Part shown: positions 20,230 to 26,348 of the stretch, in pieces | How the letters are laid out: each line of letters opens with the position of its first letter | How positions within the stretch are numbered: position 1 is the first letter of the stretch | NCBI GenBank assembly: GCA_044892505.1 | Contig: CM097882.1 | Span: forward strand, 1 to 64,000 | Length of the DNA: 64,000 bases | Direction: 5' to 3' | DNA from: Schmidtea nova | Taxonomy: Eukaryota | Position numbers and translations under genes: made by a program | Notes under the pieces: model-generated | Seen by the model: the letters and a program-made list of their open reading frames with translations, nothing else | What the model was told of the DNA's origin: nothing | Database searches by the model: none

Positions 20230-20930
20230 ATTCTCAGTAGATTGGTATAAAAATTATTTGATTCTGAGCATTTTTGATTTTCCCCGAGTCGACCCTTTTA
20301 CGTGTAAAAATTGATCGGATAAGTCAAAATTTTCATGTTTTTAGATTGGTATAAAAAATTTTTGAATTCTGAGCATTTTTGATTTTTTGGAAATTCACCG
20401 AGTTGACCCTTTTTTTACTTTTTAACCCTTTTTGGTTCGCCATTGGAATCTCAGTAGATTGGTATAAAAATTATTTGATTCTGAGCATTTTTGATTTTTT
20501 GGAATTTCCCCTACCAAAATATTGTTTTCGAAAATACCAGACTAAAAATCCTATACAAAAATAAAGATCAAAAATCATATTCAAAATTACCAGAGTCCCC
20601 TTTTGCCCGAGAAAAATCTGGGAGTAGAAATTCCTATTCAAAATAACCAGACTAAAAATCTTATACAAAAACACTAGATCAAAAATCTTATACAAAAATA
20701 CGAGATCAAAAATCATATTCAAAATTACCAGAGTCCCTTTTTGCCCGAGAAAAATCTCGGAGTAGAAATTCCTATTCAAATAACCAGACCAAAATATTGT
20801 ATTCAGAAATCCAGATCAAAAATCCTATTCAAAAATTCCTGTACAAAAAACCCAGTCCCCTTTTTGCCCGAGAAAAATCTCGGAATAGAAAATCGTATAC
20901 AAAAAAACCAGATCAAAAATCCTGTACAAA
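20230..20930. repeat. Two blocks of tandem repeats (~110-120 bp x3, then ~120-145 bp x3)
   Basis: GATTGGTATAAAAATTATTTGATTCTGAGCATTTTTGATT occurs x3 (20240, 20345, 20457). CCAGAGTCCC(C/T)TTTTGCCCGAGAAAAATCT occurs x3 (~20590, 20730, 20853). Confidence 0.85.
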
Positions 20931-21045
20931 AAATAAATTAAATAAAAATATCATAATTATCTTTTTTCACCTTTGATCTTTTTTTATTATTATTATCAAT
21001 AATTCTCATAATGACTATAGATCAAATTTTTTTTTATAAACAATA

Positions 21046-21078
21046 ACACAATATTTCGGCACAGCCTTTATCAAGTGT
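21046..21078 (-). ncRNA. Putative minimal hammerhead ribozyme (U3:A8 variant)
   Basis: The minus strand reads ACAC-TTGATAA-A-GGC TGT GCC-GAAA-TA-T-T-GTGT, giving stem I ACAC/GTGT and stem II GGC/GCC. Confidence 0.6.
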
Positions 21079-21091
21079 GTATTTGATAAGT

Positions 21092-21124
21092 GTACTTGAT
21101 AAAGGCTGTGCCGAAATATTGTGT
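21092..21124 (+). ncRNA. Putative minimal hammerhead ribozyme (U3:A8 variant)
   Basis: GTAC-TTGATAA-A-GGCTGTGCC-GAAA-TATT-GTGT; stem I is retained through G.U wobbles. Confidence 0.55.
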
Positions 21125-21188
21125 TATTGTTTATAAAAAAAAAATTTGATCTATAGTCATTATGAGAATTATTGATAATAATAATAAA

Positions 21189-21620: not shown

Positions 21621-21987
21621 TGGCTTCTCCACAATGTCTTTCCAAGACAGATTTTGTTTAGTGGAAACTGCTCTTGAAGGCGAATTAAATAAAGATGAAT
21701 ATAAAGATTTGGAAAACTTTTTCTTATATGTTCGCCGATTTTTTTCTAAATGTTTTCGAAAAATTAAAATATTTGGAGATTAATGTATTTAACAAATAAA
21801 TTTTAGTTAGAATTGAATTTTTACTTACCTTTGATGTTAATGATTCCATAATATCATAAACATTTTCTACTAATTATTTAAAAATTAAATTTAAAATAAA
21901 ATTGATGAATATAGATAACCTTTTAAAGCTTTTATAGTGATCTCATACCATTATGAGATCAAAATAAAAGACTTAATTTGTAATTAA

Positions 21988-23133
21988 GACTATGAGCGTA
22001 AACTGTCTCTTATTGCAAGGGCGCCGTTAAAACCTCAGCAGAAATTAGAACTATTGAATGACTTCTTAATTCCAGGTATTCTTCATCAAGCTATGTTTGG
22101 TGAAACTCCTATCGGGGAACTAATTAGACTCGATAAGAGAACACGAAGGGTGGTCAAGGAGTGGTGCCACCTGCCTTCAGACACAAGCTCATCCTTCATT
22201 CATGCGAAAGCAAAATTTGGAGGTATGGGAGTGTCATCGATTCGAGCGGAGGTTCAGTTTACTATTGCGAACAGATTAAATTCACTAGAATTTGTTAAAG
22301 ATAATAGAATTAATAAACTATCACACCACCCGCATATGGTCCAGAAGCTGGGTATGTGGGGTAAGGGCTTTAATGTCGAAAGCTCTAAAGTACAGTGTAA
22401 AAGAGAATTTTATTCCCTGATGCATAACAAACTGTATGATACCAATGATGGTGTTGGTTTGAGTGAAGCGCATTGCGTGCAATCGCCGAACACTTGGATT
22501 AAACATAATGCCTCCGAAATGAGCGGCCGTTCATTCGTTGGTTGTGTAAAGGTTCGTGGGAACCTTATGTCTACCGTAACTCGGTGGAGTAGGGGCGATC
22601 GGAAAGTAGGCTCTCTTAATTGCCCTAAGGGTTGCCAAGTCCCAGGTAGTCTGAATCATATAGTTCAATCTTGTCCTTGGGTTAAGGGCTTGAGAACTAA
22701 ACGTCATGATAACATAGTGGAATATGTTGCAAAAATAGCAAACAAGAATGGATGGCAGAGTATAATGGAGCCACATACTGATGTTGGTAATACATATATG
22801 AAACCTGATCTTGTGCTAATCAAGGACCAGCATGGATTGGTTCTCGACGTTCAAATCGTTTCCGATAACGGAAAGCTCTCTGACCGGAATAATGAAAAAG
22901 TCCTCAAGTATGAAATCGATGAGATCAGGAACTGGGTGTTGGATCAAGGCGTGGGAAATGTAAAGTTTGGTGGTTTAACCCTGAACTGGCGAGGTATTTG
23001 GAGCTCTGATTCTTTTAATTTATTAACTGAATTGGGCTTATCGGTAAACGACACCAGGATTATATCGATGAGAGTACTTGGAGGCACGGCGCGAATGTAT
23101 TACGCGTGGGGCAAAGGTGGGTTGAGATCGTGA
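21988..23133 (+). mobile_element. 5'-truncated R2-clade non-LTR retrotransposon: RT thumb, CCHC knuckle, restriction-like endonuclease
   Basis: ARAPLKPQQKL (R2-type), CPKGCQVPGSLNHIVQSC, RHDNIV, KPDLVL...LDVQIV, KVLKY. The reading frame is open from 21988. Confidence 0.9.
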
Positions 23134-23593
23134 GAGGTAACAATGGTTGTCTGGGGCTGGTAGTGGCGAGGTTCGTGGCTAATAAGGCAGTAGGTCTCCG
23201 ACCGGCTGTGCTAGGGAATAAAAACAATGTCGTCAAGCCGCGTGATTTGGCAGATCTGGTTGTATTCCATTTCTGAGGATGCAAAAGGGGAGCGCCAATC
23301 GGGGCTCAAAGTAGCGATATTACCTGGTGGGGTATTTATCTGATCTGATGTGGTAAGTTACGAGGTCCGATGTTGCAAACGATGTACCCCTTTGGGACAG
23401 TCTGAAACCGCCTGGAGTTGCGATGGCTGTTAATCGGCTTTGACGCGACAAAGGGAGCTATCTACTCAGGTAGGTAGTTTATTATCTATTATTGTATCAT
23501 ATCAGTAATATATCGGTGGAGTTGGTAAGATCCATTGCTAAAGTCTTCCAGTCCCCCTAATGGCGGGTAGTATACATATCGGTATACTTCTAC

Positions 23594-23707
23594 TTATCGT
23601 TACGTTCTATAGTAGCGTTTTGAGAGGTTCACTTTTGGTTATCTTTCCGAAAGTGCCTTTTTGAGGTGATAGTGTATGAAAATACACCTTCATGGAAACA
23701 TGAAGTC
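23594..23707 (+). ncRNA. Putative structured RNA module, copy 1
   Basis: Hairpins CACTTT...AAAGTG, GTGTAT-GAAA-ATACAC and CTTCATG-GAAA-CATGAAG. Confidence 0.5.
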
Positions 23708-23939
23708 GATCGATTATATGAATGACCAATGTCTTCAAAAGTTGATCTTTTATGAGCCTAATTCGTGGCCCGGCCTTGTCTCGTGGATGAAAGGTTTGCC
23801 TATTCCTCATAATATAGGTATGATCGAGGGGCTATTTAGCTCGGGGTGTTTGTAAGAGCCTAAGTAATAAAATCTTCTAGTTCCCCAACTGGTGGTAAAT
23901 ATATACTCAACATTAATTAATGTATATATCTTTATATAA

Positions 23940-24053
23940 TTATCGTTACGTTCTATAGTAGCGTTTTGAGAAGTTCACTTTTGGTATTTAGTCTTAAAGT
24001 GCCTTTTTGAGGTGATAGTGTACTTACGTACACCTTCATGGAAACATGAAGTC
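23940..24053 (+). ncRNA. Putative structured RNA module, copy 2
   Basis: Same hairpins as copy 1, with GTGTAC-TTAC-GTACAC showing a compensatory T-A to C-G change. Confidence 0.5.
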
Positions 24054-24389
24054 AGATGAGCCTAGTAGATGACACCCTCTATCTCTAATAACGAGATACT
24101 GAACTCGGGAGTTAACTTAGGCAAGTCTTATATAATAATATCTAACATGAACGGGTTTTATTCTTTACTAGAGTTCGACCGACATCTTACTTTGGCAATG
24201 TTTTATTCCCTTACTTGATTTAGATCTGACCGACATCTCATCTAGACCCAGTTCTGAGAAAACCTTTATCATTTACTATTATTATCGATCGATATAAGGG
24301 TTGGCTCCCCTAATTAATCAATCTGGTCTCCCAGTTTGAGGTCTGGAAAATGAGGAAGTCGGAAGCTAGATGGTATCTACTTCCAAAAT

Positions 24390-25140
24390 GGTGTTTCTAA
24401 TGTACTGGACATCTGCCGCCTAACAGGTTGGCCTAGTATTTGAAGAACACAGCTTTCTGGTACTCTAATCAGTGCGCGAGAAAGAAATCAAGAATATGGG
24501 TCTTCATGGGGTCTTCCGGTTAACCATTTCTAATGGGACAAAAAACGTATTCTTGGTGGTATAATTAATAATCCCCTTTATAGTCTCTCGAGACACCTGG
24601 GATTATCTTGCAAGTCGGCAAATTAGTTCCGTACCTAGCACGAACTAATTCTATCTGGACCCGAAATAAAATTATTGGTTCTAGAGATGCAGTGATGGAA
24701 GGCTGCAGGTCTCATACATCTGTGACACGACTAGCATCAATCTAGAAAAGGGTTCGGATCAGTTAATTTGATTGTATTGTTAAACCGCAAAGGCCATTGG
24801 CTTGAGAGGTGTGAACTATAATATCCCTTTTAATGTCTTGTGCGTCTCTTTAGAGGCTATCTTCTCACGGGATTCTGGATATTTAGTGTGTTCTTTAGCT
24901 ACAGGAATTAGCTTAGGACTAACAATCAGATTTTTGCCAAAATGTGTCTCTAATGTATCCGACATCTGCCGACGTCTTGTTGGCCGGATATTTGCAGTGA
25001 TACCGCTCTTGGCACATTTAAGTACTGTACAGTACTGCTGGTGCACGAAGAGAAATCGCAATTACGGGCCTCCATGGGGTGCTTCAGGTAACCATATTGT
25101 AGTATGGGACAAAAGACGTATGCGGTGGTGTATTAGTCTG
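24390..25140. repeat. Diverged ~190-bp direct repeat (24390-24580 vs ~24950-25140)
   Basis: Shared TCTAATGTA..GACATCTGCCG, GTAACCATT, ATGGGACAAAA.ACGTA and GGTGGT blocks. Confidence 0.65.
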
Positions 25141-26348
25141 GATTGAAGGGTCTACTGGGCAACTGGAGTGAAAGATTTGACAATTTGAATTAATGCATTT
25201 CTGGTGGGTCAATGTGCTCACCGAGACAGATATTGACAGTCTTGTTGATAGTATTCTTGTGCGGGGAGAAGTCGTAACCATTCCTAGACTCCTAGCTTGG
25301 TATCTAAGGGGTGGGTTGGCTTTTCCCTACTATGATGGCGAGAATCACAGTTGTATCCTCTCGAGGATACTTCTGTATCTGGTCCCGGTCTATCGAAGAA
25401 GAATAGGTTAGTGAAAGGCAACTCTCACTACTTTCGACTCGTCCTCCATTCTTCTAGTCTATTGAGGAGCATCTAGGTGTTCCTTTAATAGAGGGTCTTC
25501 CTCTCAAGGCCCCCGTGAAAGCTAGCAGGGACATTCCCGGACTAAAGCAAGGAGAAAAACCCAACAAGTCTGAAGCTGATCGGCAAACCATAATTTGTTG
25601 GTTTCGGTGCAAAAAATTACCTGAAAGCCATTTTAAAATAGCTAATTCCAGCAAGTTTTAAAAAATGAGTAATAATAACCCGTGATGTATCTCACTCACG
25701 TGCATTATAGGTGAACGGATTCATTGAAACACGGTGTAGAATATGTTTTATTGATTGCAATTTAATTAATTTGAATTACTTGTTGACATTCCTTATCAAT
25801 CCCTATCATATGCAGTCAAATACATATTTCAATTAATTTCTATTATTGATTTCTATTAACAATAATGAAATTTCTTCCGTATTATTAATATTGTATGTGG
25901 AGTTCATTCATCTTTGTAATTGTCTCAATTGCGATCTCACAAGGTTTTGGATATAATTATTTTTATTATAATTCGTCGCCATTTTTCAGTATCTTCTTTG
26001 CATAGTTGTTACATCAATGAAGGGCAAAATGTTCAAAGACTTTGCGAAGCATGCCAAGTAATAATTTGATATTTTTTATTTTATCATTAAGATATTTAAT
26101 CTTCACCTTTGAAATTTTTTTCGATTTCATTTTTTCAGACAATTAATCAAAATAGGAAGTGTTGAAAAGGAAATGAAAATCATATTTTTTATCTTTCGTT
26201 ATTTTATTAAACAGTTATTTCTAATCGAGTTCTAATTTTACAGATTGCTTTAAAAATTATTTGGTTGATTTTCGGTTTTAGAGTCGGTAATTGATAAAAT
26301 TAAAAAATATATTTAAATAATTATATTTTTACAATAAATAATTATTCA

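What the first reader, a model, noticed from the sequence alone, without database searches (positions are those of the whole stretch)
23535..24060. Duplicated multi-hairpin RNA module with covariation downstream of the R2 ORF
Seen: a ~346-bp diverged tandem duplication in which a 114-nt core is nearly invariant while the flanks differ strongly. The core changes preserve pairing: GTGTAT-GAAA-ATACAC becomes GTGTAC-TTAC-GTACAC, and the loop of the CACTTT/AAAGTG stem varies. CTTCATG-GAAA-CATGAAG (GNRA loop) is identical in both. Inference: selection on RNA structure. It could be the template-recognition element for R2 reverse transcription or an undescribed structured RNA or ribozyme. I could not match it to hammerhead or HDV folds.
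Basis: partly seen in the sequence, partly recalled or inferred. Interest (0 to 1): 0.7.

Follow-up and report, generated by a model that had tools for sequence, protein, structure and literature searches.

The report
R2 transposon carries copied ITS2 domain
The duplicated hairpin module is a copy of the first ~120 bases of the planarian's own ribosomal spacer ITS2, carried twice in the tail of an R2 jumping gene and apparently kept in shape by selection, so it is a borrowed host RNA domain and not a new ribozyme.

Summary
Window 23588-23710 and 23934-24056 are two copies, 346 nt apart and 88% identical, of a four-hairpin module. They lie in the 2.5-kb 3' UTR of a 5'-truncated R2 retrotransposon (21977-25613).

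The core is 91% and 85% identical to the first ~121 nt of this genome's own rDNA ITS2, starting right after 5.8S, and it folds the same way. The assembly statistics match Schmidtea nova schNov1.

The module also sits in the 5' leader of a second R2 lineage whose protein is only 46% identical. The genome holds at least 146 matches to the module, counting the rDNA ITS2 itself.

Evidence for constraint:
- Between R2 subfamilies the module is 80-89% identical, against 54-73% for the rest of the UTR.
- Variants shared by several copies cluster in two loops and the flanks, while singletons are spread evenly.
- Five base pairs show changes on both sides.
- The R2 copies share states that differ from the present ITS2, which argues against simple ongoing conversion.

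No Rfam family, ribozyme or R2 3' element matches.

Best reading: a captured ITS2 domain retained as a functional mimic of the host spacer. The function is inferred, not shown. The same UTR also holds two 28S-like pieces and a second covarying module, "B".

This scan found the same phenomenon before on other DNA of this genome (s1-376014). Verdict: a new variant of a known kind.

The parts
21977..25613 (+). 5'-truncated R2 non-LTR retrotransposon copy (lineage here called R2-B), inserted in a high-copy repeat and not in 28S
   Evidence: Contigs of four public runs join 21976 to 25614, the empty site. Other genomic copies start at varied 5' points, and those whose 3' end is in hand end at ~25604-25613. 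Copies of the same lineage abut the canonical 28S target TAGCCAAATGCCTCG at L013 and L052/L062.
22054..23133 (+). C-terminal remnant of the R2 ORF (thumb, CCHC knuckle, restriction-like endonuclease). The frame is open from 21988.
   Evidence: the ORF listing and translation. phmmer against the PDB hits Bombyx R2 8gh6 residues 744-1095 at E 9e-38, and also R2Tg. Pfam gives no hit for this fragment.
23416..23469 (+). 28S-like segment in the 3' UTR. It matches 28S about 123 to 75 nt upstream of the R2 insertion site and is one of the most conserved islands of the UTR.
   Evidence: blastn 23417-23449 vs L061 5248-5280, 91%. Local alignment z 11.7. Conserved 86-93% between subfamilies.
23512..23574 (+). 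Upstream box of repeat copy 1, homologous to 23840-23903. No rDNA counterpart found.
   Evidence: Local alignment z 7.6, 0 of 500 shuffles reach it. The stretches upstream of the two modules (23441-23590, 23841-23936) show no convincing match to 5.8S (z -0.2 and 2.9).
23588..23710 (+). ITS2-derived module, copy A1, four hairpins (H1 23598-23617, H2 23622-23661, H3 23672-23687, H4 23688-23705)
   Evidence: 91% identical over 121 nt to ITS2 positions ~4-124 (L019 1501-1621, directly after 5.8S at 1345-1497). Same fold as ITS2. Best hit of covariance model R1.
23840..23903 (+). Upstream box of repeat copy 2
23934..24056 (+). ITS2-derived module, copy A2 (H1 23944-23963, H3 24018-24033, H4 24034-24051)
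   Evidence: 85% identical to ITS2 and 88% to A1. A2 copies of the young and 'old1' subfamilies form a clade with support 95/90.
24383..24563 (+). Module B, copy 1: a second conserved structured RNA domain of the UTR, without rDNA homology. It is shared with the other R2 lineage, where it lies just 5' of that lineage's ITS2-like module.
   Evidence: Internal repeat with 24937-25121. Match to L038 8367-8456. RNAalifold finds 12 of 41 pairs with changes on both sides. No similarity to 5.8S. No Rfam hit.
24611..24635 (+). Second 28S-like segment, matching 28S about 400 nt upstream of the R2 site
   Evidence: 24 of 25 nt identical to L061 4969-4993 (z 9.2)
24937..25121 (+). Module B, copy 2
   Evidence: A ~85% identical version lies in rDNA-resident recombinant R2 copies L056/L063.

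Best explanation
Shown: the duplicated core is a retrotransposon-borne copy of the 5' third (about nt 4-124 of 299) of the host's own rDNA internal transcribed spacer 2. It lies twice in the long 3' UTR of an R2 element, together with two 28S-like pieces and another structured module (B). A second R2 lineage carries one copy in its 5' leader.

Supported: the active R2 lineages have kept both the fold and much of the sequence of this domain under purifying selection since the duplication, while the neighbouring UTR sequence diverged.

Inferred: R2 RNA is made by Pol I as part of the 28S co-transcript in the nucleolus. Positions identical between ITS2 and the R2 copies are mostly the ones that do not vary among the R2 copies: the 8-nt loop of hairpin 1, the linker CCUUUUUGAGGUGAUAGU, and hairpin 4. 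The domain therefore most likely works as a mimic of the 5' part of ITS2 that engages host factors which recognise that part of the pre-rRNA (pre-60S 'foot' or ITS2-processing factors). The likely effect is on processing, stability or nucleolar retention of the R2 transcript. The original capture is most simply explained by template switching of the R2 reverse transcriptase onto pre-rRNA.
For: Origin:
- Genome search, Rfam and blastn place the match directly after 5.8S in every rDNA unit.
- There is no homology to the rest of ITS2 or to 5.8S.
- ITS2 and the R2 copies fold into the same four hairpins.

Host element:
- The ORF fragment matches the R2 protein.
- Family members carry the 28S target junction.
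- Empty-site joints in public runs define the insertion.

Second lineage:
- The module lies at L038 8199-8327, 377 nt into a 7.7-kb insertion that carries a 1014-aa RVT_1 ORF.
- The independent chromosomal copy L037 is colinear with it.
- Module and ORF keep a constant ~4.4-4.6 kb spacing in many copies.

Constraint:
- 80-89% identity in the module vs 54-73% in the rest of the UTR between subfamilies (profile).
- 95.7% of cells form a standard pair, and 5 pairs changed on both sides vs 2.2 in shuffles, reached by 10 of 500.
- Lineage-shared variants fall in the H2 and H3 loops and the flanks (25 of 54 in 27 of 123 columns, p 9e-5), while singletons are uniform.

Against conversion:
- A2 copies form a clade across subfamilies.
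- Both R2 lineages share six states that differ from the present ITS2, and they are up to 91% identical to each other against 81-88% to ITS2.

Precedent for rRNA-derived pieces in R-element UTRs: PMC5035012 (28S-like 3' UTRs in fish R2) and PMC3414825 (an ITS-1 piece in a Drosophila immigrans R2/R1 SIDE).
Against: - No RNA data. The only public runs that hold the stretch are contig sets of unrecorded library type (not on record as RNA), which cannot show RNA ends or expression.
- No ITS2 or R2 from another species could be obtained, so constraint on ITS2 itself and co-evolution are untested.
- Independent compensatory events are few, about 4-5.
- Most copies analysed are dead 5'-truncated insertions.
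- Young copies also differ less in the module than in the flanks, partly because indels inflate flank divergence.
- An ITS2 mimic that attracted the cleavage machinery inside a 3' UTR would cut the ORF from the 3' end needed for reverse transcription, so the benefit is unclear.
- The module is in different UTRs in the two lineages.
Confidence: 0.5

Rival explanations
1. Passive passenger. A pre-rRNA fragment was picked up by template switching of the R2 reverse transcriptase and has no function in R2. Its similarity to ITS2, and among copies, is kept up by repeated recapture or homology-driven template switching (conversion) against the very abundant pre-rRNA or between R2 lineages.
For: The same UTR holds other rRNA-like scraps (28S-like 23416-23469 and 24611-24635). 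R2 lineages here clearly recombine: L056/L063 combine an R2-B-like UTR body with an R2-A-like 3' terminus. The module is far more similar between the two lineages (up to 91%) than their ORFs are (46% aa), which fits recent exchange. In the oldest subfamilies, A1 and A2 cluster within each element. A one-off ITS-1 capture is known (PMC3414825).
Against: All 24 R2 copies share states that differ from the present ITS2, so conversion by ITS2 is not frequent. A1 and A2 have stayed distinct across subfamilies. Lineage-shared variation avoids stems, the H1 loop and the linkers, while singleton decay is uniform. Compensatory pairs are present. Retention of two copies, and retention in two lineages, needs explaining.
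Confidence: 0.25
2. R2-protein binding element. The module, perhaps together with module B, is recognised by the R2 protein for template selection or for positioning a second subunit, like the 3' and 5' protein-binding RNAs of Bombyx R2.
For: R2 proteins bind structured RNA from both the 3' UTR and the 5' end (established for Bombyx R2; PMC4117753, PMC10499050). That fits a module found in a 3' UTR in one lineage and a 5' leader in the other, always with module B in the same UTR.
Against: The module lies 1.5-2 kb from the 3' end where reverse transcription starts. Sequence-level conservation shared with ITS2 is not expected from an R2-protein constraint. Rfam's R2 3'-element model does not match. 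No binding data exist.
Confidence: 0.15
3. A self-cleaving ribozyme or other new catalytic RNA.
For: R2 elements of other animals use an HDV-like ribozyme at the 5' end, and none was detected here.
Against: The sequence is ITS2-derived, and four simple hairpins explain it. No ribozyme family matches even at E up to 10. Two self-cleaving copies inside a 3' UTR would destroy the template.
Confidence: 0.03

Closest known systems
28S rRNA-derived sequences in the 3' UTR of R2 elements of actinopterygian fish (Kojima et al. 2016, PMC5035012)
   Same: An R2 UTR carries a diverged copy of host pre-rRNA sequence as a stable part of the element. The same window UTR also has two 28S-like pieces. The second lineage's insertion replaces 153 nt of 28S upstream of the site, as described for those fish elements.
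   Different: Here the main captured piece is transcribed spacer (ITS2), not mature 28S next to the target. It cannot help annealing at the target site. It is duplicated, and in another lineage it lies in the 5' leader.
ITS-1-derived segment in the R2/R1 hybrid SIDE of Drosophila immigrans (Eickbush and Eickbush 2012, PMC3414825)
   Same: A transcribed-spacer fragment of the host rDNA unit lies inside an rDNA-specific retroelement.
   Different: That is a single non-autonomous element with a 75% identical piece and no reported structure or conservation. Here the piece is a defined structural domain kept in two autonomous R2 lineages and many subfamilies.
ITS2 of the host rDNA (5' hairpins following 5.8S)
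   Same: 85-91% sequence identity, and the same four hairpins with the same loop of hairpin 1 and a GNRA loop on hairpin 4.
   Different: The module is not between 5.8S and 28S. It lacks the remaining ~175 nt of ITS2, including the long helix. It also carries fixed differences, such as an A-U to G-C change in hairpin 1.
R2 3' UTR protein-binding element (Rfam RF00524) and HDV-like R2 5' ribozyme
   Same: Structured RNA in R2 untranslated regions.
   Different: No model match. The position is not terminal, and the sequence origin is the host spacer.

Membership tests
Copy of host rDNA ITS2 (5' domain) | Significant sequence homology to the ITS2 of the same genome, delimited by 5.8S and 28S | tested here: met
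   91% and 85% over 121 nt to L019 1501-1621. 5.8S is at 1345-1497 and 28S starts at 1797, by Rfam.
Copy of host rDNA ITS2 (5' domain) | Same secondary structure as the ITS2 segment | tested here: met
   Identical four-hairpin MFE and centroid folds. 95.7% of cells form a standard pair across 25 sequences.
Copy of host rDNA ITS2 (5' domain) | Homology to the whole spacer or to the adjoining 5.8S | tested here: not met
   Downstream flanks vs the rest of ITS2: z 0.1 and -0.8. Upstream flanks vs 5.8S: z -0.2 and 2.9. Only the first ~121 nt were captured.
R2 clade non-LTR retrotransposon (host element) | Protein with a reverse-transcriptase thumb, a CCHC knuckle and a C-terminal restriction-like endonuclease related to R2 | tested here: met
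   E 9e-38 to Bombyx R2 8gh6 residues 744-1095, and hits to R2Tg. The RT domain itself is lost by 5' truncation in the window copy.
R2 clade non-LTR retrotransposon (host element) | Insertion at the conserved 28S site upstream of TAGCCAAATGCCTCG | tested here: met
   Met for family members L013 and L052/L062. The window copy itself is ectopic, inside a repeat.
R2 3' UTR element (Rfam RF00524) | Match to the covariance model | tested here: not met
   No hit at the gathering score, nor at E up to 10, over 23134-25620.
Self-cleaving ribozymes (HDV-like, hammerhead, twister, pistol, hatchet) | Match to a family model, or a catalytic core | tested here: not met
   No hit at E up to 10 in the window UTR or in the R2-A 5' leader. 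Cleavage activity is not testable with these tools.
R2 UTRs with rRNA-derived sequence (Kojima 2016 type) | A diverged 28S-like stretch inside the UTR, less similar to 28S than the true flank | tested here: met
   23416-23469 (z 11.7) and 24611-24635 (z 9.2).

The most novel reading that the evidence does not exclude
Planarian R2 elements have no detectable HDV-like ribozyme. Instead they may use borrowed host pre-rRNA processing signals: an ITS2 5'-domain mimic, with module B and 28S-like pieces. The nucleolar ITS2 machinery (Las1/Grc3, Rat1, exosome, 'foot' factors) would then cut, trim or shield the R2 RNA within the Pol I co-transcript. That would be a transposon parasitising ribosome-assembly factors through a spacer mimic.
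Probability: 0.15. Interest if true: 0.8.

Novelty: new variant of a known kind. Interest (0 to 1): 0.58.

Why it matters
R2 is the model site-specific retrotransposon and is now a genome-engineering tool. How its RNA is released from the rRNA co-transcript, and how it is handled in the nucleolus, is known only for ribozyme-bearing lineages.

A conserved, duplicated copy of an ITS2 structural domain in two R2 lineages suggests a different route: mimicry of a host pre-rRNA processing substrate. It also gives a compact natural probe for which part of ITS2 is recognised in flatworms.

If the module is instead a passenger, it still documents repeated template switching between R2 RNA and pre-rRNA, and modular exchange between R2 lineages.

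Tried and rejected
1. Rfam on the whole window, the UTR and the R2-A leader found no family, even at E up to 10.
2. Homology of the flanks to the rest of ITS2 or to 5.8S: none.
3. Module B as a diverged 5.8S, because it precedes the ITS2-like module in R2-A: rejected, z about 0.
4. The box upstream of each module as the tail of module B, or as the linker seen in R2-A: rejected, z below 0.
5. A metagenome scan with a 20-mer of hairpin 4 gave 22 loci. All are chance hits according to the covariance model.
6. Searches for R2 relatives in other species, to test co-evolution:
   - The word-index search found one hit at 30% identity.
   - The full HMMER search found nothing above 37% identity.
   - The two best contigs are R2 elements in 28S of unknown hosts, without the module.
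7. RNA evidence: no run that holds the stretch is on record as RNA, and contigs cannot show RNA ends.
8. A full-length R2-B copy, to inspect its 5' UTR: none among the loci fetched. The longest reaches only the equivalent of residue 255 of the R2-A protein.
I did not try to get round this.

Full report
**Observation**

The window is AT-rich (17-43% GC in 2-kb steps), with a GC-richer island at about 22000-25600. The repeat finder reports a direct repeat 23591-23707 / 23937-24053: 117 nt, 88% identical, 346 nt apart. Each copy folds into four hairpins that are more stable than shuffles, with z -4.1 and -3.3.

About 64 nt upstream of each core is also homologous (23512-23574 vs 23840-23903, z 7.6). 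The downstream flanks are not alignable (z 0.3).

**Host element**

The open frame 22054-23133 has no Pfam hit. It matches residues 744-1095 of the Bombyx mori R2 protein (8gh6, E 9e-38) and also avian R2 proteins.

Genome searches find many copies, 68-98% identical, that start at varied 5' points; those whose 3' end is in hand end near window 25604-25613. That is the signature of 5'-truncated non-LTR insertions.

Contigs from four public runs join window 21976 to 25614. This gives the empty site and fixes this copy at 21977-25613, inside a high-copy repeat. Other copies of the lineage abut the canonical R2 target TAGCCAAATGCCTCG... of 28S (L013, L052/L062). It is therefore a genuine R2 lineage, here called R2-B. 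This copy is ectopic, and its 3' UTR is about 2.5 kb long.

The genome has 1,251,382,582 bases in 283 contigs. That is exactly the size and contig number of the Schmidtea nova assembly schNov1 (PMC11410931).

**What the core is**

The genome search returned many 121-nt matches at 91% identity, 14-22 kb apart on small contigs. Rfam shows that these lie in rDNA units, directly after 5.8S (L019 1345-1497) and before 28S (from 1797). The core is therefore homologous to about nt 4-124 of the 299-nt ITS2. Identity is 91% for copy A1 and 85% for A2.

Nothing beyond that piece matches the rest of ITS2 or 5.8S. The ITS2 segment folds into the same four hairpins. The hairpins were inherited from ITS2. 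They are not a new RNA invented by the element.

**Distribution**

A covariance model of the module finds at least 146 matches in the genome. These include the ITS2 of the rDNA units, the R2-B copies, and a large set of 127-131-nt versions belonging to a second R2 lineage, here called R2-A.

R2-A has a 1014-aa ORF with an RVT_1 domain. It is 46% identical to R2-B over the C-terminal 350 residues. It sits in the 28S site of several rDNA units as a 7.7-kb insertion that replaces 153 nt of 28S.

In R2-A the module lies 377 nt into a ~3.1-kb 5' leader (L038 8199-8327, minus strand), just after a second module, 'B'. The independent chromosomal copy L037 is colinear with it. Module and ORF keep a constant 4.4-4.6 kb spacing at many loci.

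Module B occurs twice in the window UTR (24383-24563 and 24937-25121). It shows 12 of 41 predicted pairs with changes on both sides. It has no rDNA or Rfam counterpart.

The window UTR also holds two 28S-like pieces, 23416-23469 and 24611-24635.

**Selection or relic**

- *Rate.* Between R2-B subfamilies the ITS2-like columns are 80-89% identical, against 54-73% for the other UTR columns. In a sliding profile, the rRNA-like pieces are among the most conserved islands, along with the stretch 23454-23553 and the box upstream of A2.
- *Pairing.* On 25 distinct module sequences, 95.7% of cells form a standard pair. Five pairs changed on both sides, against 2.2 in column shuffles (10 of 500 reach it). 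Slid controls drop to 35-53% paired. Examples:
  - A-U in ITS2 vs G-C in all but one R2 copy, in hairpin 1.
  - U-G, U-A and C-G at the closing pair of hairpin 3.
  - G-C, G-U and A-U within hairpin 3 in R2-A.
- *Where variation falls.* Variants shared by two or more copies, which arose in active lineages, are concentrated in the loops of hairpins 2 and 3 and in the flanks (25 of 54 in 27 of 123 columns, p 9e-5). Singletons, which reflect decay of dead copies, are uniform (7 of 35, p 1.0).
- *No homogenisation.* A2 copies of the young and 'old1' subfamilies form their own clade (95/90). The duplication therefore predates about 20-28% UTR divergence, and A1 and A2 are not being homogenised.
- *Distinct from the present ITS2.* Both R2 lineages share six states that differ from the present ITS2. 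They resemble each other (up to 91%) more than either resembles ITS2 (81-88%). This argues against frequent conversion by ITS2. It points to one capture followed by exchange between lineages, or to capture from an older ITS2 variant.

The caveats are real. There are few independent compensatory events, most copies are dead, there is no outgroup, and recombination between R2 lineages is evident (L056/L063).

**Mechanism**

Shown: the origin, the position, the duplication and the fold.

Supported: purifying selection on the fold and on particular unpaired stretches.

Inferred: function. R2 RNA arises from the Pol I co-transcript. The R2 copies have kept the same unpaired sequences as ITS2: the hairpin-1 loop, the linker after hairpin 2 and the GNRA hairpin. 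I therefore favour mimicry of the 5' part of ITS2 towards host nucleolar factors, affecting processing, stability or retention of the R2 RNA.

Template switching of the R2 reverse transcriptase onto pre-rRNA is the simplest origin. It also explains the 28S-like scraps.

The rivals are a functionless passenger kept similar by recapture or exchange, an R2-protein binding element, and a ribozyme. The ribozyme is least likely: there is no model match, and self-cleavage inside a 3' UTR would be self-defeating.

**Comparison with what is known**

28S-like sequences in R2 3' UTRs are described for fish R2 (PMC5035012). A single ITS-1-derived piece is described in a Drosophila immigrans R2/R1 SIDE (PMC3414825). 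Three full-text searches found no report of an ITS2-derived module in R2, nor did term searches within five of the papers they returned.

This scan has already noted the same phenomenon on another piece of this genome (s1-376014). I reached it independently here and tested it on this window. Another note (s1-428495) describes R2 copies with 28S flanks outside rDNA, which agrees with L037, L052 and L013.

**Verdict**

'Undescribed RNA or ribozyme' and 'template-recognition element' are not supported. The feature is a new variant of a known kind, rRNA-derived sequence in R-element UTRs, with an untested but interesting possibility of spacer mimicry.

Noticed in passing
window 24383-24563 and 24937-25121; L038 8355-8570 (minus): Module B is a ~190-nt structured RNA domain shared by two R2 lineages whose proteins are only 46% identical. 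12 of 41 predicted pairs show compensatory changes. It has no rDNA, 5.8S or Rfam counterpart. In R2-A it lies directly 5' of the ITS2-like module. It may be the more novel RNA of the two.
   Followed up: partly
window 23416-23469 and 24611-24635: Two 28S-like pieces lie inside the R2 3' UTR, matching 28S at about -123..-75 and -401..-377 from the R2 site. The first is one of the most conserved islands of the UTR.
   Followed up: partly
L037 5039 (C2:255841000-255849000) and window 24611: A chromosomal R2-A copy begins inside 28S 404 nt upstream of the R2 site. That is within 3 nt of where the 28S-like piece of the R2-B UTR begins. A discrete RNA 5' end there is conceivable, for example from the 28S 'gap' or hidden-break processing known in planarians. 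This was not tested.
   Followed up: no
L038 1016-8703 (C55:64000-73000), L061 5216/5370: The rDNA-resident R2-A insertion is 7.7 kb with a ~3.1-kb 5' leader that contains 258-nt tandem repeats. It replaces 153 nt of 28S upstream of the canonical site. Its first ~40 nt look weakly 28S-like (z 2.2). No HDV-like ribozyme was detected.
   Followed up: partly
L056 1112-2524, L063 1-1272: Recombinant R2 copies at the 28S R2 site (L063 in rDNA contig C55, L056 on chromosome 2) combine a UTR body ~85% identical to window 24635-25331 with the 3' terminus of R2-A. This shows modular exchange between R2 lineages. It also explains the very high read depth over 24814-25361 in public runs.
   Followed up: partly
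L054/L055/L058, L057 (3' junctions at the 28S site): At least two further R2 3'-end types abut the same 28S site (ending ...gagtaggcgg and ...gagtatcgg). Several R2 lineages therefore coexist. One type is a ~840-nt truncated insertion found in several rDNA units (two in the array at the end of chromosome 1, at least one on contig C55, and C10).
   Followed up: no
window 21000-21171: Nested perfect inverted repeats (36-nt arms 100% and 53-nt arms 98% complementary) lie just upstream of the R2 copy. The same sequence flanks other loci (L004, L011), so it is a dispersed foldback or MITE-like repeat.
   Followed up: no
window 20513-20838: A 138-nt tandem repeat (2.4 copies, 82% matches) with nested 27-nt and 13-nt periodicity.
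   Followed up: no
G000 contig C10 (e.g. 85628-85759): A 132-nt variant of the module scores 120 bits. It lies about 2.9 kb upstream of an uninserted 28S R2 site, against 2.7 kb for ITS2 elsewhere. It may be a variant rDNA/ITS2 type.
   Followed up: no
L088 4195-4559 (metagenome contig Ga0612063_27333): An unrelated R2 (34% identical protein) of an unknown host has a weak 28S-like stretch (48 bits, LSU model 1891-2388) between its stop codon and the true 28S. This is another case of a 28S-like 3' UTR.
   Followed up: no
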